Shown piece after piece: positions 2,192-56,728 of a stretch of 64,000 bases of DNA. The notes under the pieces were generated by a model that did not search any database, was not told the DNA's origin, and saw only the letters and a program-made list of their open reading frames with translations. The position numbers and the translations under genes were made by a program. Source of the stretch: Octopus sinensis (taxonomy: Eukaryota); assembly GCF_006345805.1 (NCBI RefSeq), contig NC_042999.1:17236001-17300000 (forward strand), given 5' to 3'. The first letter of the stretch is position 1; the number at the start of each line of letters is the position of its first letter.

Positions 2192-2400
2192 GGCGGCGAG
2201 CTGGCCGCATCGTTAGCACGCCAGGCAAAATGCTTAGCAAGATTTCGTCTGTCATTACGTTCTGAGTTCAAATTCCGCGCAGGTGGACTTAGCATTTCAT
2301 CCTTTCGGGGTCGATAGATTAAGTACCACGAAACACTGGGGTCGATGTTATCGACTAGTCTCTCCCCAAAATTTCAGGCCTTGTACCTATATTAGAAAAG
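2192..2400 (+). mobile_element. SINE family A variant with alternative 3' tail
   Basis: Head GGCGGCGAGCTGG, B-box, tail CCCCAAAATTTCAGGCCTTGTACC; GTTTTATATA present on both flanks. Confidence 0.85.
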
Positions 2401-2501
2401 TTTTATATATTACTGAACGGGTAAGCAATTCTCTCTTGAATATTATATCGTACTCAAAAATTCTACATACGCTTAAACACGCATGCATTGAAAGACATAC
2501 A

Positions 2502-3228: not shown

Positions 3229-3453
3229 TTCTTTACTACCCACAAGGGGCTAAACACAGAGGAGACAACAAGGACAGACAAACGGATTAAGTCGATTACA
3301 TCGACCCCAGTGCGCAACTGGTACTTAATTTATCGACCCCGGAAGGATGAAAGGCAAGGTCGACCTCGGCGGAATTTGAACTCGGAACGTAACGGCAGAC
3401 GAAATACGGCAACGCATTTCGCCCGGCGTGCTTAACGTTTCTGCCAGCTCGCC
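3227..3453 (-). mobile_element. SINE family A; its 5' end abuts the palindrome
   Basis: Full A body on the minus strand; the head ends at the palindrome boundary. Confidence 0.9.
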
Positions 3454-3662
3454 GTAACTTTTAACGCACACACAACGCACTTTAGCTAATCCTCGGATTT
3501 AAACCGTTGTATGGAAATGAGTAAATTATTCGGCCCAAGGGTATAGTACAAAAAAATTGCCGAAGGTGCCACGCAGTGGGACTGAACCCGGAACCATGTG
3601 GTTCATAAGCAACATACTTACTACACAGTCACTCTTGCACCTATGGTATATATATATATATA

Positions 3663-3773: not shown

Positions 3774-3809
<36 letters not shown>

Positions 3810-4003
3810 CCATAGGTGCAAGAGTGACTGTGTAGTAAGTATGTTGCTTATGAACCACATGGTTCCGGGTTCAGTCCCACTGCGTGGCACCTTCGGCAAT
3901 TTTTTTGTACTATACCCTTGGGCCGAATAATTTACTCATTTCCATACAACGGTTTAAATCCGAGGATTAGCTAAAGTGCGTTGTGTGTGCGTTAAAAGTT
4001 ACG
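3453..4003. repeat. ~550-bp palindrome (fold-back inverted duplication)
   Basis: Outer arms (~3453-3660 and ~3796-4003) are exact reverse complements by eye. The inner microsatellites are also mirrored, centred near TGTACA at 3740-3745. The ORF track shows identical N-termini at 3557(+) and 3899(-). Confidence 0.95.
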
Positions 4004-4195: not shown

Positions 4196-4861
4196 TGTAT
4201 GTGTGTTTCTGTGTGTATGTAAGTCTTTAGTCATTAAGAGAAATAATTACTATTAAAGCTTTAGCTAATTCTTGAATTTGAACATATCCGCAGGTTTTTA
4301 CAGAAATTTGCTCGTGTTGACGTTGCTGTTCGCGTTCCATTTCACAATCAGCAAGCATATGTAATAACATGAAGGTGGTAACACCTCAAACTTGAAACCC
4401 AAGCAAATAAATGATTATTTTACTATGGCTGTGTGTGTGATTTCGCATAAATGCATCACTCATAAAGCTTGTCTATTCTAAGCAAAATATAACCTTTTCT
4501 CCTTTCACTGATAGCATTATACGTTTAGTCAGGTATATAGAAATGGATTTATTGAGGTTTCTGAAAAGAATTGCGTGATAAACAAATTCACATATTCAGT
4601 GTTTATCGTCATATTGGCAGCAGTGATTTTTTTTTTTTTTATAATCTAGTCAGAAGGCAAGTGATACGTACGGGTAGGAGAGTAATCAGATTTACATGCA
4701 TACAATGCGTAGCTGGTATTTTATTATATCGACACCGGTAAGAGAGAAGGTGAGCTGACCTTGGAGGAAGCCTCAACTCAAGTCTTAAGCAACTAGGTTA
4801 TATTTCGCAAGGTACTTTTCCCGACGCGTAGCGGTTATGCCAATTCATGACTCTACATACC

Positions 4862-5330
4862 TATTTCTTTACTACCCACAAGAGGCTAAACACAGAGAGG
4901 ACAAACGAATTAAGCTGATATACCGACACCAGTGCGTAACTGGTACATACTTAAGCGACCCCGAAAGGATGAAAGGCAAAGTAGACATCGGCGGAATTTG
5001 AACTCAGAACGTAGCGGTAGACGAAATATTGCTAAGCATGTCGCCCGGCGTGCTAACGATTCTGCCAGCTCGCCGCCTTAAAGACAGAAGAAATACTTAT
5101 TTCTTTACTACCCACAAGGGGCTAAACATCGAGAGGACAAACAAGGACAGACAAACGGATTGAGTCGATTACATCGACTCCAGTGCGTAACTGGTACTTA
5201 ATTTATCGACCCCGAAAGGATGAAAGGCAAAGTCGACCTCGGCGGAATTTGAACTTAGAACGCAACGGTAGACGAAATGCAGTTACGCATTTCGCCTGGC
5301 ATGCAACGTTTCTGCCAGCTCGCCGCCTTC
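4862..5330 (-). mobile_element. Two complete SINE-A units in tandem inside one TSD
   Basis: Two heads and two tails; 16-bp TSD CATGACTCTACATACC at 4846-4861 and 5331-5346. Confidence 0.9.
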
Positions 5331-5620
5331 CATGACTCTACATACCATTATTACTAATACGATATGTAGTTTAATGCAGTTACTTCGGCCCCTAAATAAT
5401 TTGATTTCAATCATTGTCTTCTATGTTTTACACGCTATATTCAATAGACTGCAGCTTTGCTTGTGAATCACCTTCAAAGATTTCCAGTCGAAAGAAATTG
5501 ACCGCAGTACAGTTCTTAAAACCTGGCATTTAATCTTTTGGATCTCTTTGGCCAAAACACACTGATCTCCTTGGACGTAAAAGAACCGACGCCGCTTATG
5601 ATGCTGTTTGTCCTCTATAT

Positions 5621-5700: not shown

Positions 5701-6214
5701 AAAGAAACAATATATAATGCTTATAAAATACTTATGTAATATTGTACTATTTGCTTACAAAATAAATATATGATAGAAAAGAAATTGTCATTTTTTATTA
5801 TTCTCATTATATATATATTGTTTCCCGTATAAATTAATATTTCTAAGCAATATTACCGGTCCCTCGCACATTCGAAAGACAAAAAAACAAAAACAAACAA
5901 AACTAACGGTACCCCACATCCGAGACACACAGACGTGTACACATAAATGTACGTATAAACGATGCGCTCCTTTCAGTTTCCTTTCACTCAGAAAACTTTG
6001 GTTGGCCCCAGGCTGTAGTAGGACTCACTTGGTCACTGTTCCACGGAGTAGGACTTGAAACCAGAACCATGTCGTTGGGAAGCAAGCTTGTAATGTTTAT
6101 AAAAATCCCTCTATAGCCTATTAGTTCTGATTCAACAACAGGTAGAACTATAAAAATGAATAATTAGTCCTCGGAAATGAGAGATGAAGACTGTAGAAAC
6201 AGTTATAAAACAAG

Positions 6215-6590
6215 GCGGCGAGCTGGCAGAATCGTTTGCACGGCGGGCGAAATGCTTAGCGGTATTTCGTCTGCGTTACGTTGTGAGTTCAAATTCCGCC
6301 GAGGTCGACTTTGCCTTTCATCCTTTCGGGGTCGATAAATTAAGTACCAGTCACGCACTGGGGTCGATGTAATCGACTTAATACCTATGTCTGTCCTTGT
6401 TTGTCCCCTCTGTGTTTAGCCCCTTGTGGGTAATAAAGAAATAGGTATTTCGTCTGCCGCTACATTCTGAGTTCAAATTCCGCCGAGGTCGACTTTGCCT
6501 TTCATCCTTTCAGGGTCGATAAATGAAGTACCAGTTACGCACTGGGGTCAATCTAATCGACTTCATCCCTTTGTCAAGTCCGTGTTTATC
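6215..6590 (+). mobile_element. SINE-A with duplicated body
   Basis: Full unit followed by a second unit starting at GTATTTCGTCTGCC. Confidence 0.9.
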
Positions 6591-6765
6591 CTCTAATAAA
6601 CAGTTATAAAAGAGAAAACTTGTTACAAATTAACAAAAAATGTACACTTTAATTTTATGTCACCGAATCTGCTCCTCCTTGAGAATTGAAACAATCTTTT
6701 GGTACTTTTATAGAAATAGATATATGCTAATATAGATTACTATAAGACTGAATATATCATGATGA

Positions 6766-9896: not shown

Positions 9897-10445
9897 GTTA
9901 GCACGCCGGGCGAAGTGCTTAGCGGTATCTCGTCTGAGTTCAAATTCCGTCGTGGTCGACTTTGCTTTCATACTTTGGGGGTCGATACATTAAGTACAGT
10001 TATGCACTGAAGTCGATGTAATCGACGTAATCCCTTTGTCTGTTCTTTGTCCCCTCTATAAGAAACGTTAGCACGCCGAACGAAATGCTTAGGTATTTTG
10101 CCTGCCGTTACGCTCTGAGTCCAAATCCCGCTGAAGACGACTTTGCCTTTCATTCTTTCGGGGTGGATAAATTAAGTACCAGTTACGCACTGGGGTCGAT
10201 ATAATCGACTTAATCCGTTTGTCTGTCCTTGTTTGTCCTCTCTGTGTTTAGCCCCTTGTGGGTAGTAACGAAATAGGTATTTCGTCTGCCGTTACGGTCT
10301 GAGTTCAAATTCCGCCGAGGTCGACTTTGCCTTTCATCCTCTAGGGATTCGATAAATTCAATACCAGTTGCGTACAGGGGTCGACCTAATCGACTGGCCC
10401 CACCTTTCCAAACATTTCGGGCCTTGTGCCTAGAGAAGAACGGAT
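9897..10445 (+). mobile_element. Cluster of 3-4 partial and complete SINE-A units
   Basis: Repeated GAGTTCAAATTCC/GTCGACTTTGCCTTTCAT blocks. Confidence 0.85.
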
Positions 10446-10544
10446 TATTTATAACTACCAAGATATACTATAGTCACTAAGACATTAATCTCTGTCAGTA
10501 CATGCCATTGGCTCACTCATAAGCGTGTGCCAAGAAGGAATCCT

Positions 10545-11150: not shown

Positions 11151-11708
11151 TTTCTATTGAATAGAAAACGTATGTGTCTAAGAGTGCATGCAACTTTGAA
11201 AGTCACCACTACCAGCACCACCAGCACCATCACCAGCATCATCATCATCATCATCATCATCATCATACTACTTTTTACGATTTTTTTTATTAGTACTGTA
11301 TTTTTTTACTTTCATTTGCAAACAATGGGCATTGTGCAGTTTGGACTTTATTGTCATTAAGTATAGAGAAATGACTATCTTTTTAGCATTTATTTTATTT
11401 AAAGAATAATAGTTCGCTTCTAATAATCTAATATGGTTTCCTTTGGAGAAGGGTGAAATGTATTTGTAACAAACAACGCATATCAGATAAAATACACGAG
11501 TAGTATCACACACCTGAAAATAAAACATTGGCACAAAAATCTGTCATAAGTAGAAATGAATGACAAATAATTATTTACACCTGATCAAGTGAAAAATACT
11601 ACGATATAACAGCGTTGCAATAACATCTGCAACAGTTTTGCTACAGTGGTTGATCAGAAAGATGCGCAGGTGAAGGCGCGTATCTTACTGGTTAAGGTAT
11701 TCAGTTCA

Positions 11709-11826
11709 GTTTACGGCCATATCACGTTCAAAGCACCGGTTCTAGTCCGATCACCGAAGTTAAGCAACGTCGAGCCTAGTTTGTACTTAGATAGGTGACC
11801 GCTTGGGAAACCTAGGTGCAGTAAGC
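11709..11826 (+). rRNA. 5S rRNA-derived copy 1 (pseudogene or SINE head), 118 nt
   Basis: GTTTACGGCCATATCACG...CCGATCACCGAAGTTAAGCAACGTCG...GGTGACCGCTTGGG...GTGCAGTAAGC; the ends can pair as helix I; no T-run terminator follows. Confidence 0.9.
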
Positions 11827-11840
11827 GTCACACATTGTTA

Positions 11841-12256
11841 AGGCGGCAAGCTGGCAGAAACGTTAGCACGCCGGGCGAAATGCTTAGCGGTATTTCGTCT
11901 GCCGTTACGTTCTGAGTTCAAATTCCGCCGAGGTCGACTTTGCCTTTCATCCTTTCGGGGTCGATAAATTAAGTACCAGTTACGTACTGGGTCGATATAA
12001 TCGACTTAATACCTATGTCTGTCCATGTTTGTCCCCTCTATGTTTAGCCCCTTGTGGGTAATAAAGAAATAGGTATTTCGTCCGCTGTTACGTTCTGAGT
12101 TCAAATTCCGCCGAGGTCGACTTTGCCTTTCATCCTTTCAGGATCGATTAAATAAGTACCAGTTACGCACTGGGGTCGATATAATCAACTTAATCCGTTT
12201 GTCTGTCCTTGTTTGTCCTCTCTGTGTTTAGCCTTTGTGGGCAATAAAGAAATAGG
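11841..12256 (+). mobile_element. SINE-A with duplicated body, fused downstream of 5S copy 1
   Basis: Standard A head 14 nt after the 5S end. Confidence 0.9.
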
Positions 12257-13304
12257 TCAAGGTATTCAGTTCACGATCTTAAGGTCTTCCATACTTGACG
12301 GTTTGTTGTATCTTTGAGAAAGAGGCTTTATTTCACGTTATTACTGTCCAATCAATCGGTAAAAAACGTGTAGTAACTCTATTTGAAAAATCCAGCTTTA
12401 TCACATTCTGTGTCATGCCAAATAGCACTAAAAACTACATTAAGGTTACATGTCTGTGGTGTGCTCAGCCACTGGCGCCTTAATGCCATGAGTGGGATGT
12501 TCCGTTGATTGGGTCGTGTCACGTTAGATTCCAAACCACACACGTGGTTATTCAACTTAGTGGCTTTACTTTTGCACATGTTCTGTTTAGCACAATGATA
12601 TTTAAAAACACCTTCACATAGCCAGATGCAGCCCTTTTTCTCCACTGCACGCCTGAATTCCAGATATGAAATTTTCAGCGTTTGTAAAGAATGTATACAT
12701 TCCTGTTGGAACCTTATAAATAATATATATAAGAAACACCATACAGCACCAATATAGTTATTAAACAGTATAAGGTAAGATGGTAGAAAGTGGTCCGAAA
12801 ATCAAAGAACATCGATATGATTTAGAATTAACGAAGCAGGCCCCCAAAATGTGGGTAATCGGAATCCTCCGTAGCACACAAACTGCATGTCGACGATTAG
12901 ATCTATCTGTTGCAAGTATTAGGAGTGGAATTCTTCCAATAGTATTGAGTTTACTAATAAAACAAGTATTTCGGCTGCTCCTTATTGAATTCCTTTTCCA
13001 TTCGTTTATTTAGATTATAAATGAAAGTACACACACACACACATACGCACACAAACACACAAACACACACACGCACACACATAAACACACACTTACATAC
13101 TCGCGCACGTGTATGGAGAATATTTTATCCTTTTCTCCGTTAATTTTATTTGCGTTAAGAATATTTTAAGCAGTTAATATATTGCATAACATTTTTGCCT
13201 CAGTCGTTGATTTTATGAAACTGCCTGTGCATTTCCACTCATCTTGTCATCGCTTAGTAATATCTCGTTATATTTCTAGTGAGTCATTGTGTCTTACTAG
13301 TAAA

Positions 13305-27445: not shown

Positions 27446-27677
27446 TGGCGGCGAGCTGGCAGAAACGTTAGCACGCCGGGTGAAATGCGTAGCCGTATTT
27501 CGTCTGCCGTTACGTTCTGAGTTCAAATTCCGCCGAGGTCGACTTTGCCTTTCATCCTTTCGGGGTCGATAAATTAAGTACCAGTTTCGCACTGGGGTCG
27601 ATGTAATAGACTTAATATCTTTGCCTGTCCTTATTTTTCCCCTCTAAGTTTAGCCCCTTGTGGGCAGTAAAGAAATA
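27446..27677 (+). mobile_element. SINE-A, full length, young
   Basis: 16-bp TSD TATACTTATTTCGTGT at 27428-27443 and 27678-27693. Confidence 0.95.
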
Positions 27678-28279
27678 TATACTTATTTCGTGTAGATAAA
27701 ATTAGTATCTGTCAAGTATTGAGGTTGGCAAAATCTATGATAGTCAACATTATAATATGTAACCTTTTCTTAACTAAAAAATCAATAAATTGTTTATATG
27801 CACTCTAACTTATTGATATACATTCTTCGACATCCACACAAAACGTGACAAAAAGGATGAATATAAGTCATGTATTAAAACGTGACTGTGAAGCTGTAGT
27901 CATGGTTACCCAAAGATGAGAAAACACTCCTGTCCTTGTATAGTTCTATATCCTTATTCACCTATTTTCTACTTGTCGCAAACATTTTTATTTACATGAA
28001 TGAATTTTTCATGTTATCATTTCCGCAGTAAATTCAGGATTTTATAAAATACTTTGAGCTACACAACATGATGTACTTAGTCAGTTATGAATATGAAATA
28101 TGTAACCATTATACATTATGCATACGCACATAAAATACATAGACAGACATGTACACACACACGCGCGCACACACACATATACACTTTCATGCATATATTT
28201 TTGATTTTGATTTGATTTTTCCAGTTTCAGCTCATGAGCTGTGGCCATGCTGGGGCACCGCCATTAAACAATGTGCTAT

Positions 28280-28391
28280 GCTTACTGCACCTAGGTTTCC
28301 CAAGCGGTCACCCATCTAAGTACTGACCAGGCTCGACGTTGCTTAACTTCGGTGATCAGACAAGAACCGGTGATTTCAATGTGATATGGCC

Positions 28392-28397
<6 letters not shown>
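28280..28397 (-). rRNA. 5S rRNA-derived copy 2 (head of a SINE3-like element spanning 28197-28397)
   Basis: Reverse complement is a 118-nt 5S sequence (first 3 nt replaced by a TA run), followed by an 18-nt linker and the LINE-type tail. Confidence 0.9.
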
Positions 28398-30018: not shown

Positions 30019-30442
30019 GTTCATAAGGCTGGTTTCCCCTTCTCGGCTGACTGGACCCCGGATTACACATTTTTGTCATCTGGGGGGGGGGAGTATAAGG
30101 ACAAGAAATGAACACAACGCATCATTGTAATTAGGAATCGAAACCACAATATTGCGATCTTGTGTGCAAAGGCAGCGAGCTGGCGGAAACGTTAGCATGA
30201 TTGGCGAAATGCATAGCCGTATTTCGTCTGCCGTTACGTTCTGAGTTCAAATTCCACCGGGGCCGACTTTGCCTTTCATCCTTTCGGGGTCGATAAATTA
30301 AGTACCAGTTACGCACTGGGGTCGATGGAATCGACTTAATCCCTTTGTCTGTCCTTGTTTGTCCCCTCTGTGTTTAGCCCCCTGTGGGTAATAAAGAAAT
30401 AGATCTTGTGTGCACCATGCTAACCACTAAGCCGCACACCTC
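30019..30442 (-). mobile_element. SINE family E split by a SINE-A insertion
   Basis: B-box at 30134-30145 and A-box at 30423-30433 are separated by the insert. Confidence 0.7.
30169..30401 (+). mobile_element. SINE-A nested in the SINE-E head
   Basis: 13-bp TSD GATCTTGTGTGCA at 30156-30168 and 30402-30414. Confidence 0.95.
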
Positions 30443-31327: not shown

Positions 31328-31583
31328 CTTTTCATATAGTTTATTGTATGAGCTTACCCCTGAAAATGCTGTACAGGTGCACTTTATATAAATCCTATAC
31401 CGCCACCTGGTATAAAGTAAAGGGCTGTGACATATTGGTTAGGGTGTTGCACTCATTATCGTAAGATTGTGGCTTCCATTCCTTGACTGAACAATGCGTT
31501 GCTCCACTCCACTAACCTGGCACCAAGGAGTAATCATGCGACAAGCCGGCGTCCCACCCAGCGAGTAATATATATGCCAGAAA

Positions 31584-32295: not shown

Positions 32296-32541
32296 TGTTC
32301 CTTCACGAGCCATGCCAGCCTCATAAGGGGCGGTTTCCCGGTTTCGGTGGCGTAGAAATTCCCCACCTGGACGGGACGCCGGTCCTTCGCAGAATTACTC
32401 ATTTTTGCCGGATGAGTGAACTGGAGCAACGTGAAATAAAGTGTTTTGCTCAAGAATACAACGCATCGTCCGGTCCAGGAATCGAAACCACGACCTTACG
32501 ATCATGAATTCAACACCCTAACCACTAAGCCACGCGTCTCT
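32296..32541 (-). mobile_element. SINE family E, full length
   Basis: tRNA head, central TTGAGCAAAACACTTTATTTCACGTTGCTCCAG block shared with family C, tail shared with family D. Confidence 0.85.
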
Positions 32542-35940: not shown

Positions 35941-36394
35941 TTTATTCTTGTATTCGTTTCAGTCATTTTGAACGCGGTCATGCTGGAGCACCGCCTTTAG
36001 TCGAGCAAATCGACCCCAGGCCTTATTCTTTGGAAGCCTAGTACTTATTCTATCGGTCTGTTATACCGATCCACTAAGTTACGGGGATGTAAGCACACCA
36101 GCATCGATGTCAAGCGATGGGACACACACACACATACGTACAAAGATACATACATACATACATACAAAAATACATACATACATACATATATATATATATA
36201 TTATATATATATATATATACACACATACATATGACGGGCTTCTTTCAGTTCCCGTCTACCAAATCGACTCACAAGGCTTTGGTCGGCCCGAGGCTATCGT
36301 AGAAGACACTTTCCCAAAATTCCACGCTGTGGGACTGAACGTGGAACCATGTGGCTAGTTAGTACTTACTTACCACGCAGTCACTCCTGCACCT
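35941..36394 (-). mobile_element. SINE-B, full length, 11 nt downstream of 5S copy 3
   Basis: Complete B on the minus strand. Confidence 0.9.
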
Positions 36395-36405
36395 ATAAAT
36401 GGATT

Positions 36406-36523
36406 GCTTGCAGCACCTAGGTTTCCCAAGCGGTCACCCATCTAAGCACTAACTAGGCTCGACGTTGCTTAACTTCGGTGATCGGACGAGAACCGGTACA
36501 TTCAACGAGAGATGGCCGAAAAG
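36406..36523 (-). rRNA. 5S rRNA-derived copy 3, 118 nt
   Basis: Reverse complement matches copies 1 and 2 (CCGATCACCGAAGTTAAGCAACGTCGAGCCTAG...GGGAAACCTAGGTGCTGCAAGC); no T-run terminator follows. Confidence 0.9.
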
Positions 36524-36861
36524 GAAATATATAAAAGATGTTAAATTATTTATTACTTAGATTGATCTTTTTTCTTGGTCTATCGTGATAGGCATAAACA
36601 CATACGTATGTCTACATGAGTTAGGTACGTTGATTATATATAACATGCATATGGTTGAGCAAAATGCTTCACTCTCGTGAGGACTCAGTATACTATACTA
36701 CATACGGTTACAGTCTCACTTTCATGGGTTTCACTTCAGGCGATTGAATTATCTATGGAACTAGTTTCTGAAAACCCTCACTATAGTTATTTCAAATTGG
36801 ATGTGACTGCAACCAGAGGATGTTAAGTTCATCGAAATTTTGGGGCATTAAAGACCAAATA

Positions 36862-37272
36862 GGCGCAGGAGTGGCTGTATGGTAAGTAGCTTGCTAACCA
36901 GCCACATGGTTCCGGGTTCAGTCCCACTGCGTGGCATCTTGGGCAAGTGTCTTCTGCTATAGCCTCGGGACGATCAAAGCCTTGTGAGTGGATTTGGTAG
37001 ACGGAAACTGAAAGAAGCCTGTCGTGTATATGTATATATATATATATATGTATCTGTGTGTATGTGTTTGTATGTCTGTGTTTGTCCCTCTAGCATTACT
37101 TTACAACAGATGCTGGTGTGTTTACGTTCCCGTCACTTAGTGGTTCGGCAAAAAGAGATCGATAGAATAAGTACTGAGCTTACAAAGAATAAGTCCCGGG
37201 GTCGATTTGCTCGACTAAAGGCGGTGCTCCAGCATGGCCGCAGTCAAATGACTGAAACAAGTAAAACAAAAA
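36862..37272 (+). mobile_element. SINE-B, full length
   Basis: Near-consensus head, body and tail. Confidence 0.95.
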
Positions 37273-39332: not shown

Positions 39333-39913
39333 GGCGGCGAGATGGTAGAATTGTTATCGCGTCAGACAAATTGCTTTGCTGCATTAAAAGACCCCCTTCG
39401 GTCATGAATGACCATGGGATTGCACCTAGAAAGTTACCCTCCTAGACACAAGTCCGGGCAAGGTTGTTTATGGAAGACCAGCAGTCGCCCATGCATACCA
39501 GCCTCCCCTCTCCACGCCACCAGCGTTATCCAAGGGAAAGACAAAGGTCGATACAGCTTGGCACCTGTGACGTCGCAACTCATTTCTACAGCTGAGTGAA
39601 CTGGAGCAACGTGAAATAAAGTGCTTTGCTCAAGAACACAACACGCAGCCCGGACCGGGATTCGAGCTCACAACCTCACGATCGTAAGCTCGACGGTCTA
39701 ACCACTGAGCCATGCGCCTTCACATTGCTGCATTAGATCCTGCTTTACGCAATGAATTCAAACTCCGCCGGGGTCGCTTTAGCATTATTCCTTTCGGTGG
39801 CGTGAGGTGTGGGTCTGTAAAATAAGCTCCAGTCAGGTACTGAAATGAAAGCAATCGCCTATCCCTCCCCTCAAAATTCCAGGTGTTTTGCCTATAATAG
39901 AAATAATTATTAT
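39333..39913 (+). mobile_element. Old SINE-A variant interrupted by SINE-C
   Basis: Own 13-bp TSD TTCCATGTTTTAA at 39320-39332 and 39914-39926. Confidence 0.8.
39387..39723 (-). mobile_element. tRNA-derived SINE family C, full length
   Basis: Head GTGAAGGCGCATGGCTCAGTGG; 11-bp TSD TTGCTGCATTA at 39376-39386 and 39725-39735. Confidence 0.9.
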
Positions 39914-39954: not shown

Positions 39955-40396
39955 AATCTTTTCTACTCCATGCACAAGGCCCGAAATTTTGGGGGGATGG
40001 AGCCAGTCGATTAGATCGACCCCAGTATGCAACTGTTACTTTATTTATCGACCCCGAAAGGATGAAAGGTCAAGTTGACCTCGGCGGAATTTGAACTCAG
40101 AACGTAAAGGCAAACGAAATACCTATTTCTTTACTAACCACAAGGGGCTAAACACAGAGAGGACAAACAAGGAGAGACAAACGGATTAAGTCGATTATAT
40201 CGACCCCAGTGCGTAACAGGTTCTTATTGGTAAAGCGATCCCGGCGGCGTTTGAATTTCGCAGAGGTCGGAATTGCCTTTCATCCCCCGAAATGATGAAA
40301 GTCAAAGTCGACCTCTGCGGGATTTGAACTCAGAACATAACGGCAGACGAAATACCGCTAAACATTTCGCCCAGCGCGCTAACGTTTCTGCCAAGT
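39955..40396 (-). mobile_element. SINE-A multi-unit copy
   Basis: Repeated A blocks on the minus strand. Confidence 0.85.
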
Positions 40397-56259: not shown

Positions 56260-56728
56260 TCGTATTCGGTTCGATATGTGTTCCCCCCAGCTGGAGGGGA
56301 CGCCAGGTCATCGCAGCGTTACTCAAGAAACAGGAAGAGAGAGTGAGAGAAATTTGTGGCGAAGGAGCACAACAAGGGTCGCCACCATCCCCTGCCGGAG
56401 CGTCGTGGAGCTTTGGATGTTTCCGCTCAATAAACACACACAACTCCCGGTCTGCGAATCGAAACCGCGATCCTCCGACAGCAAGACCGCTGCCTTAACC
56501 ACTGGGCCATTTTAAAGCCAAGCCAGACTCATGGGCCCGGTTTCCCGGTTTCAATGGCGTATGTGTTCCCCAGCTGGACGGGATGCCAGTCCATTGCAGC
56601 GTTACTAATCGCAACGAGAAATGAAGTGTTTTGCTCAAGAACACAACGCGTCGACCGGTCTAGGAATCGAAACCACAATCTTACGATCATGATGCTGACA
56701 CTTTAACCACTATACCACGCGCCTCCAC
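56260..56728 (-). mobile_element. SINE-E (56511-56728) + SINE-D (56260-56510) composite
   Basis: Two different tRNA heads in tandem; 12-bp TSD ATATAGCATAAT at 56248-56259 and 56729-56740. Confidence 0.85.

What the first reader, a model, noticed from the sequence alone, without database searches (positions are those of the whole stretch)
11694..12273. TSD-bounded 5S rRNA + SINE-A chimera inserted as one block
Seen: a 15-bp direct repeat AAGGTATTCAGTTCA (11694-11708, 12259-12273) encloses a 5S copy starting exactly at nt 1, a 14-nt linker and a SINE-A. The interrupted host SINE rejoins cleanly when the block is removed. The linker shares CACATTGTT with 5S copy 2, and the switch to SINE-A occurs at GGCGG, which begins both the SINE-A head and copy 2's LINE-type tail. 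Inference: a 5S-headed element swapped its tail for SINE-A by template switch or recombination at that microhomology, or a 5S-promoted read-through RNA was retrotransposed.
Basis: partly seen in the sequence, partly recalled or inferred. Interest (0 to 1): 0.75.

Follow-up and report, generated by a model that had tools for sequence, protein, structure and literature searches.

The report
5S rRNA–SINE chimeric retrocopy in octopus
A full-length 5S rRNA copy, a 12-base spacer and a complete resident SINE were pasted into an older octopus SINE as one 550-bp unit; this is a clean new example of a known process (building 5S-headed SINEs) rather than a new kind of element.

Summary
An exact 15-bp direct repeat (11694-11708 and 12259-12273) brackets three parts: a full-length 5S rRNA copy (11709-11827, Rfam 90.8 bits), a short spacer, and a complete SINE-A. 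Removing the block and one repeat copy restores an older SINE, which has three other copies in the window. So the block entered in one event.

Three corrections:
- The spacer is 12 nt, not 14. SINE-A starts at AAGGCGG.
- SINE-A here is the ordinary quasi-dimeric subfamily. The same internal junction occurs at four window loci.
- The LINE origin of copy 2's tail was not shown.

All three 5S copies in the window are fused at their 3' end to SINE or tail modules. Each spacer ends in a T-run, and each partner starts at its own first base. A SINE-A+SINE-A pair inside one duplication follows the same rule.

Best reading: a reverse transcriptase jumped from the 5' end of SINE-A RNA onto a U-ended, 5S-bearing pol III transcript. 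Whether this copy is a one-off or belongs to an amplified family could not be tested, because no searchable genome of the host was available. The host is Octopus, since SINE-A matches an O. vulgaris locus at 91-95%. This is a known kind of element (SINE3, AmnSINE1, HaSE3, L1 chimeras). Interest is moderate to low.

The parts
11670..11693 (+). Left part of the host SINE ('SINE-C'), interrupted in its head region
   Evidence: The empty-site alignment to 32391-32539, 39583-39723 and 56613-56728 begins here.
11694..11708 (+). Left target-site duplication AAGGTATTCAGTTCA (possibly from 11690, 18/19 match)
11709..11827 (+). Full-length 5S rRNA copy, model positions 1-120
   Evidence: Rfam RF00001, 90.8 bits, E 3e-18. 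It has 4 private changes against the majority of the three window copies.
11828..11839 (+). 12-nt spacer TCACACATTGTT ending in a T-run; interpreted as a pol III 3' trailer carried with the 5S module
   Evidence: 10 of 12 bases are shared with the spacer of 5S copy 2 (TAGCACATTGTTT), which has a different 3' partner.
11840..12074 (+). SINE-A unit 1, consensus positions 1-236, starting at the element's true first base (AAGGCGG)
   Evidence: 96.2% identity to the window consensus. The 5' end is defined by duplication-bounded copies at 214, 30169 and 31582.
12072..12258 (+). SINE-A unit 2, consensus positions 50-236 (quasi-dimer), ending ...AAAGAAATA(GGTC)
   Evidence: 92.5% identity. The same 236->50 junction occurs at 6212-6591, 10061-10395 and 40393-40005.
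12259..12273 (+). Right target-site duplication AAGGTATTCAGTTCA
12274..12380 (+). Right part of the host SINE-C
28196..28397 (-). Related element E2: 5S (28397-28279) + spacer TAGCACATTGTTT + 42-nt two-hairpin tail module + (AAAATC)n
35950..36523 (-). Related element E3: 5S (36523-36405) + spacer ATCCATTT + complete SINE-B from its first base (36396)
4846..5346 (-). Comparable composite: two different SINE-A copies head-to-tail inside one 16-bp duplication (GGTATGTAGAGTCATG). The upstream copy ends ...GTCTTT and the downstream copy starts AAGGCGG.

Best explanation
The block is a chimeric retrocopy made and inserted in one event.

Proposed steps:
1. The reverse transcriptase that mobilises SINE-A (from an unidentified LINE) primed on the 3' tail of a quasi-dimeric SINE-A RNA at a nick in an older SINE.
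2. It copied that RNA to its very 5' end.
3. It then continued on a second RNA, a pol III transcript made of 5S rRNA plus a 12-nt trailer ending in U's, and copied it to 5S nucleotide 1.
4. Integration produced the 15-19 bp target duplication.

The result carries the 5S internal promoter, has no T4 terminator anywhere, and ends in a tail the LINE can recognise. It therefore has what it needs to behave as a new 5S-headed complex SINE.

Shown: single insertion; natural ends at both junction sides; the 5S+spacer module is shared with a second element that has a different tail.

Inferred: the template jump itself; the trailer identity of the spacer; and whether the jump happened at this locus or in an ancestral master copy (roughly even odds).
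For: - One insertion: exact duplication, and the empty site restores a SINE that has three other copies. No repeat flanks the 5S part or the SINE-A part separately.
- The duplication length matches ordinary SINE-A insertions, which have 10-16 bp duplications.
- The junction lies at SINE-A's first base.
- The spacer travels with the 5S, not with SINE-A. E2 has the same spacer but a different tail.
- All three 5S copies in the window are full length and fused within 8-13 nt to a SINE or tail start. With about 40 repeat blocks in 64 kb, my arithmetic puts chance adjacency at about 0.5% per copy.
- In 4 of 4 composite junctions in the window the upstream partner ends in TT or TTT, against 2 of 9 ordinary SINE-A 5' junctions (Fisher p=0.02). 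A fifth case is in an Octopus vulgaris locus.
- There is no run of four or more T in the 550-nt unit.
- 3'-extended 5S precursors trimmed by Rex1/Rexo5 are established (PMC12129344).
Against: - No second copy of this exact junction was seen in 64 kb plus 44 kb of Octopus DNA, so family versus one-off is open.
- Three 5S chimeras among roughly 25-35 SINE copies is far more than L1-type chimera rates. This argues that at least some are copies of propagating masters rather than fresh jumps.
- The native 5S gene flank of Octopus is unknown, so the spacer's identity as a trailer is untested.
- E2 and E3 have no detectable duplications, so their one-step origin is not proven.
- The AAKGGCGG similarity between SINE-A's head and E2's tail start (about 1e-3 by chance) is not explained by a pure end-to-end jump.
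Confidence: 0.62

Rival explanations
1. This is an ordinary copy of an already established composite SINE family (5S head + spacer + SINE-A). The family is transcribed from the 5S internal promoter through the terminator-less spacer and retrotransposed by SINE-A's LINE partner. The chimera arose earlier, and this locus is simply one insertion of it.
For: - No T4 run in the whole unit.
- Private 5S changes are rarer in the internal control region than outside it (5/144 vs about 19/213, p=0.05), as expected for promoter-constrained masters.
- The density of 5S chimeras in the window is high.
- About 24,000 5S-derived loci, 'likely SINEs', are reported in the giant squid (PMC6962438).
- E1 and E2 share a spacer and the G7/A112 mismatch.
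Against: Only one such junction was found in 108 kb of Octopus DNA. Copy number could not be measured. SINE-A keeps its own full head, which a 5S-driven element would not need.
Confidence: 0.4
2. An existing 5S-headed element of the E2 type (5S + spacer + short tail) exchanged its tail for SINE-A. The exchange was a switch or recombination guided by the shared AA(G/T)GGCGG motif, so the acceptor site was internal rather than an RNA 3' end.
For: Homology between E1 and E2 runs from the 5S through the spacer to GGCGG and stops there. The motif matches 7 of 8 bases, and chance is about 1e-3 by my arithmetic. E2's tail begins exactly where the two-hairpin tail module begins in SINE-B, which suggests a functional minimal 5S SINE.
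Against: There are only two elements. Both motif positions are natural module starts, so the coincidence may be between modules rather than a sign of the joining mechanism. The direction (E2 to E1, or E1 to E2) cannot be told.
Confidence: 0.3
3. Read-through. A SINE-A inserted just downstream of a genomic 5S gene or pseudogene and destroyed its terminator. The 5S-promoted read-through RNA was then retrotransposed.
For: The spacer ends in a T-run, where a terminator would sit. The unit lacks T4.
Against: There is no remnant of a SINE-A duplication between the spacer and SINE-A, or after SINE-A's 3' end. The three 5S copies would need three separate terminator hits by different elements.
Confidence: 0.1
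4. RNA ligation (RtcB-type) joined the 5S RNA to SINE-A RNA before reverse transcription, as proposed for U6/L1 chimeras.
For: It gives sense-oriented, full-length 5' partners, as seen in human U6/L1 chimeras (bioRxiv 10.1101/2025.02.02.635956).
Against: SINE-A is joined at its first base. A primary pol III transcript carries a 5' triphosphate, not the 5'-OH that this ligase needs (established biochemistry; inference).
Confidence: 0.04
5. Two independent nested insertions, or a chance repeat.
For: SINE density is high: 18% of the window is interspersed repeat.
Against: One duplication encloses both parts, and neither part has its own. The empty site is restored exactly.
Confidence: 0.02

Closest known systems
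SINE3 / AmnSINE1-type Deu-SINEs (5S rRNA head fused to a tRNA-SINE; Kapitonov & Jurka 2003; Nishihara et al. 2006, as cited in PMC4824008 and PMC4758252)
   Same: The 5S head supplies a pol III promoter upstream of a pre-existing SINE body and tail. The proposed origin is a reverse-transcriptase switch from SINE RNA to 5S rRNA.
   Different: Those families keep only part of the older SINE head and exist as consensus families with many copies. Here both modules are complete, a 12-nt spacer is retained, and copy number is unknown. The host is a cephalopod.
HaSE3 of Helicoverpa armigera (PMC3272025)
   Same: An invertebrate 5S-headed SINE that shares its body and tail with a resident SINE (HaSE1). 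It is interpreted as a template-switch chimera.
   Different: HaSE3 lacks the partner SINE's head and is a demonstrated multi-copy family with an identified RTE partner. Neither point is shown here.
L1-mediated chimeric retrogenes (U6/L1, 5S/L1, Alu/L1; Buzdin et al. 2002-2003; bioRxiv 10.1101/2025.02.02.635956)
   Same: Two RNAs are joined in the sense orientation inside one target duplication, with a small pol III RNA as the 5' partner.
   Different: Human 5S/L1 chimeras are mostly antisense and truncated. Here the 5S is sense and full length with a 3' trailer, the 3' partner has no poly(A), and the enzyme is not L1.
Complex and quasi-dimeric SINEs as defined by SINEBase (PMC3531059)
   Same: It combines complete SINE-type modules. 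The SINE-A part is a quasi-dimer with an internal duplication.
   Different: Family status needs at least 100 copies, which was not testable here.
The ~24,000 5S-derived loci of the giant squid genome (PMC6962438)
   Same: Dispersed 5S-like loci in a cephalopod, suspected to be SINEs.
   Different: That paper gives counts only, with no structure. The three elements here show what such loci can look like in Octopus.

Membership tests
5S rRNA-derived SINE (SINE3; SINEBase criteria) | At least 60% identity to 5S rRNA over at least 60 nt at the 5' end | tested here: met
   Full-length Rfam match, 90.8 bits
5S rRNA-derived SINE (SINE3; SINEBase criteria) | Short (<1 kb) interspersed element with retroposition hallmarks | tested here: met
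   550 bp between 15-bp duplications; empty site restored
5S rRNA-derived SINE (SINE3; SINEBase criteria) | [quoted passage not shown] | not testable with these tools
   No searchable Octopus genome. One junction of this type in 64 kb, none in a further 44 kb.
5S rRNA-derived SINE (SINE3; SINEBase criteria) | 3' tail shared with a partner LINE | tested here: inconclusive
   The tail is that of SINE-A, which clearly transposes (more than 14 copies with duplications). No LINE or reverse-transcriptase remnant was found in the window.
Template-switch chimeric retrogene (Buzdin type) | Two unrelated RNAs in the same orientation inside one target duplication | tested here: met
Template-switch chimeric retrogene (Buzdin type) | 5' partner is a full-length small pol III or nuclear RNA | tested here: met
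   5S positions 1-120 abut the duplication
Template-switch chimeric retrogene (Buzdin type) | Poly(A) 3' end and an L1 endonuclease site (L1 machinery) | tested here: not met
   The 3' end is ...AAAGAAATA with no poly(A). A different, tail-recognising LINE is implied.
AmnSINE1-like 5S + tRNA composite | Downstream module is tRNA-derived | tested here: inconclusive
   SINE-A has a box-B-like GAGTTCAAATTCC by eye. However, ARAGORN found no tRNA in the window, and the Rfam tRNA model does not hit it at E<=1 over the block or at E<=10 over the SINE-A copy at 31582. The SINE-C and SINE-B copies tested at E<=10 also gave no tRNA hit.
Functional 5S rRNA gene | T-run terminator at the 3' end, in a genic (usually tandem) context | tested here: not met
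   No T4 in or after the unit. It sits inside a SINE between duplications.
Quasi-dimeric SINE-A subfamily | Consensus 236->50 internal junction | tested here: met
   Same junction at four window loci and in O. vulgaris L001

The most novel reading that the evidence does not exclude
Octopus, and perhaps cephalopods generally, may carry an undescribed and abundant class of 5S-headed complex SINEs. These would be generated repeatedly when a LINE reverse transcriptase jumps end-to-end from the 5' end of a SINE or LINE-tail RNA onto the oligo-U 3' end of pol III transcripts (pre-5S RNA, or prematurely terminated SINE RNA). The block would then be a founding or propagating double-promoter element, the intact intermediate long postulated for the origin of SINE3/AmnSINE1-type SINEs. 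It would also explain the tens of thousands of 5S-derived loci reported in cephalopod genomes.
Probability: 0.3. Interest if true: 0.55.

Novelty: new member of a known kind. Interest (0 to 1): 0.35.

Why it matters
Fusion of a 5S rRNA to a resident SINE by template switching has been inferred from consensus sequences in vertebrates and moths, where the junction is already eroded. Here every part is intact: 5S from base 1, a U-ended trailer, the partner SINE from its own base 1, one target duplication, and a reconstructable empty site.

Two further 5S fusions and a SINE+SINE fusion in the same 64 kb suggest a simple junction rule: the upstream RNA ends in U's and the downstream RNA starts at its first base. 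That rule can be tested genome-wide. If it holds, it would explain why cephalopod genomes hold so many 5S-like loci. It does not change what is known about how SINEs arise.

Tried and rejected
Attempts at a genome-wide census that failed:
- The SINE-A antisense ORF as a protein handle gave no candidates.
- Exact-pattern scans for a 26-nt 5S stretch and a 23-nt SINE-A stretch in metagenome, prokaryotic-genome and viral collections gave 0 hits.
- SINE and 5S strings were not found in the paper library.

Reaching Octopus assemblies through proteins:
- Rhodopsin gave a 24-kb O. vulgaris locus. This confirmed the host genus (SINE-A at 91-95%), but it had no 5S and no neighbouring genes to walk from.
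- A decayed Tc1/mariner transposase remnant from that locus gave one O. bimaculoides locus (SINE-B only). It also gave ENA contigs from another organism that lack these SINEs.
- No 5S was found in any of these loci.

Other negative results:
- No coding or LINE remnant in the window's longer ORFs.
- The Octopus 5S rRNA paper (PMC326244) and the octopus genome paper (PMC4795812) are not held. I therefore could not decide whether the window's 5S consensus is the cellular 5S or a diverged master.
- No duplications were found for E2 and E3.
- tRNA origin of the SINE heads was not confirmed.

Rejected explanations: nested independent insertions, a chance repeat, and formation of the SINE-A dimer in this event.

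Full report
**What is there.** The 15-mer AAGGTATTCAGTTCA occurs exactly twice in the window, at 11694-11708 and 12259-12273. At two or fewer mismatches, none of 100 dinucleotide shuffles reaches the observed count. The match extends to 18 of 19 bases. Between the two copies lie four parts:
- A full-length 5S rRNA copy at 11709-11827 (Rfam RF00001, model 1-120, 90.8 bits). It starts on the base after the left repeat.
- The spacer TCACACATTGTT at 11828-11839.
- Up to four bases (GGTC) that belong either to the SINE end or to the longer version of the duplication.

**Single insertion.** I joined 11300-11708 to 12274-12700 and searched the window. The junction region aligns across the join with 32391-32539 (69% over 153 nt, E 1e-15), 39583-39723 and 56613-56728. 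In the multiple alignment, one copy of the 15-mer sits in register within the head of this older SINE, 'SINE-C'. Neither the 5S nor the SINE-A part has flanking repeats of its own. Two nested insertions, or a chance repeat, can be set aside.

**SINE-A.** The window holds at least 14 SINE-A copies. Copies with their own 10-16 bp duplications define its ends: for example 214-448 (TTGTTCTAACGGGA), 27447-27677 (TATACTTATTTCGTGT) and 30169-30402 (ATCTTGTGTGCA). It starts at AAGGCGGCGAGC and ends at ...GTAAAGAAATA. In the block it therefore starts at its own first base (11840), and the spacer is 12 nt rather than 14. The block's SINE-A is consensus 1-236 (96.2% identity) followed by 50-236 (92.5%). 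The same 236->50 junction occurs at 6212-6591, 10061-10395 and 40393-40005 and in an Octopus vulgaris locus. The quasi-dimer is thus an inherited subfamily feature, not a product of this event. I could not confirm that the head is tRNA-derived. ARAGORN finds no tRNA in the window, and the Rfam tRNA model does not hit SINE-A at E<=1 over the block or at E<=10 over the copy at 31582. Tested copies of SINE-C and SINE-B also gave no tRNA hit at E<=10. Only a box-B-like motif is visible by eye.

**The other two 5S copies.** The window has exactly three 5S copies, all full length, with no fragments.
- Copy 2 (28397-28279, minus strand) is followed by TAGCACATTGTTT and then AATGGCGGTGCCCCAGCATGGCCACAGCTCATGAGCTGAAAC plus (AAAATC)n. 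That 42-nt stretch is the terminal module of a second SINE family, SINE-B. In SINE-B it begins at the same position, AAAGGCGG, directly after a GGGGTCGAT...TCGACT hairpin. It folds into two hairpins (-17.8 kcal/mol, z -3.6). In copy 2 the second hairpin is kept through changes on both sides (CAGTCaaatGACTG versus CAGCTcatgAGCTG).
- Copy 3 (36523-36405, minus strand) is followed by ATCCATTT and then a complete SINE-B from its first base, ATAGGTGCAGG.

All three 5S copies are therefore fused, within 8-13 nt, to the start of a retrotransposable module. With about 40 repeat blocks in 64 kb, I estimate chance adjacency in the same orientation at roughly 0.5% per copy. Copies 2 and 3 have no detectable duplications, so only the block is proven to be a one-step insertion.

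**A junction rule.** In all three 5S fusions the upstream part ends in a T-run (GTT, GTTT, ATTT) and the downstream part starts at a natural first base. A fourth composite shows the same pattern. At 4846-5346 (minus strand), two clearly different SINE-A copies (93% and 86% to consensus) lie head to tail inside one 16-bp duplication. They are joined as ...GTCTTT|AAGGCGG. A T-run precedes 4 of 4 composite junctions, against 2 of 9 ordinary SINE-A 5' junctions (Fisher p=0.02). A fifth, messier case is in O. vulgaris locus L001 (...GCCTTT-AA-AAGGCGG). Pol III transcripts end in a few U's, and 5S rRNA is made as a 3'-extended precursor trimmed by Rex1/Rexo5 (PMC12129344). I therefore read the spacers as 3' trailers of 5S-bearing pol III transcripts. 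I read the composites as end-to-end template jumps: the reverse transcriptase reaches the 5' end of the first RNA and continues on the 3' end of a U-tailed second RNA. This is inference. The native Octopus 5S flank could not be obtained.

The spacer belongs with the 5S, not with SINE-A, because copy 2 shares 10 of its 12 bases while having a different tail. The context AAGC-N-CACATTG occurs only at these two places. Copies 1 and 2 also share A at position 112, a G7/A112 mismatch in helix I, where copy 3 has T. Their homology continues through AA(G/T)GGCGG and then stops. A 7-of-8 match at both junctions has a chance of about 1e-3. The caveat is that both motif positions are natural module starts and there are only two elements. 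The two models give the same product and can be separated only by a genome-wide table of junctions.

**One-off or family.** This is the main open point.
- For a family: the unit has no run of four or more T in 550 nt, so the 5S promoter could drive a read-through transcript. Private 5S changes are rarer in the internal control region than outside it (p=0.05). Three 5S fusions among a few dozen SINE copies is far above the rate of L1-type chimeras. The giant squid genome is reported to hold about 24,000 5S-derived loci, 'likely SINEs' (PMC6962438).
- Against a family: there is only one junction of this type in 64 kb, and none in a further 44 kb of Octopus DNA.

I put fresh jump versus copy of a master at roughly even odds.

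**Host and the attempted census.** A cephalopod rhodopsin query led to the O. vulgaris chromosome assembly. That 24-kb locus carries SINE-A at 91-95% identity to the window consensus, plus SINE-B. The window is therefore from Octopus vulgaris or a close relative. Further attempts to gather Octopus DNA gave only one O. bimaculoides locus and contigs from another organism. Pattern scans of the DNA collections found nothing.

**Comparison with what is known.** The mechanism and the product type are established ideas.
- A switch from SINE RNA to 5S rRNA is proposed for SINE3/AmnSINE1 (via PMC4824008, PMC4758252).
- The same is proposed for HaSE3 in a moth (PMC3272025).
- Small-RNA/L1 chimeras inside one duplication are well documented in mammals (bioRxiv 10.1101/2025.02.02.635956).

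The block differs in three ways. Both modules are intact and a trailer is retained. The 5S is sense and full length, whereas human 5S/L1 chimeras are mostly antisense and truncated. And it uses a LINE system without poly(A). By SINEBase criteria (PMC3531059) it has the structure of a complex 5S-headed SINE, but the copy-number criterion is untested.

**Verdict.** This is a new member of a known kind. Interest is moderate to low, at 0.35.

Noticed in passing
window 28196-28397 (-): 5S copy 2 looks like a minimal 5S-headed SINE: 5S, a 13-nt spacer, a 42-nt two-hairpin tail and (AAAATC)n. The tail's second hairpin differs from the SINE-B version by changes on both sides of the stem, which suggests a structure-constrained recognition element.
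   Followed up: partly
window 35950-36523 (-): 5S copy 3 is fused through ATCCATTT to a complete SINE-B starting at its first base. No target duplication is detectable, so a one-step origin is not proven.
   Followed up: partly
window 4846-5346 (-): Two different SINE-A copies sit head-to-tail inside a single 16-bp duplication. They are separated by 18 nt that resemble SINE-A positions 50-67 and end in TTT. This is a SINE+SINE chimera with the same junction rule.
   Followed up: yes
window 2192-2403, 10061-10449, 39958-40393; SINE-B copies e.g. 36859-37262: SINE bodies share a GGGGTCGATnnnnTCGACT hairpin, after which three different tails are attached: the SINE-A tail, a GGCCCCAyC...CAAAATTTCGGGCCTTGTGCC tail, and the SINE-B tail. 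This points to modular tail swapping at a fixed boundary.
   Followed up: partly
window 3453-3662 and 3794-4003: A perfect (100%) 210-nt inverted repeat with a 131-nt microsatellite spacer, including a SINE-B head and the end of a SINE-A. It is either a very recent inverted duplication or an assembly fold-back artefact.
   Followed up: no
L001 24000-24259 (-) (Octopus vulgaris OX597836.1): A mosaic of SINE-A 91-236, then 50-108 ending GCCTTT, then AA, then SINE-A 1-56. This is another junction of a T-run end to SINE-A's first base, but the downstream piece lacks its 3' part, so a later rearrangement is likely.
   Followed up: partly
L001 18558-19200 (-): A decayed Tc1/mariner-family transposase remnant with three in-frame stops, interrupted upstream by a SINE-B. 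Its relatives include an annotated O. bimaculoides protein (62% identity).
   Followed up: partly
window 11709-11827, 28279-28397, 36405-36523: The three 5S copies share an AT-shifted sequence that still fits the 5S model well (88-94 bits), for example GUUUAC/GUAAGC in helix I. I could not tell whether this is the cellular Octopus 5S or a diverged SINE master.
   Followed up: partly
whole window: The window is 66% A+T, has no convincing protein-coding ORF, is rich in microsatellites, and is about 18% interspersed repeat by self-comparison alone.
   Followed up: partly
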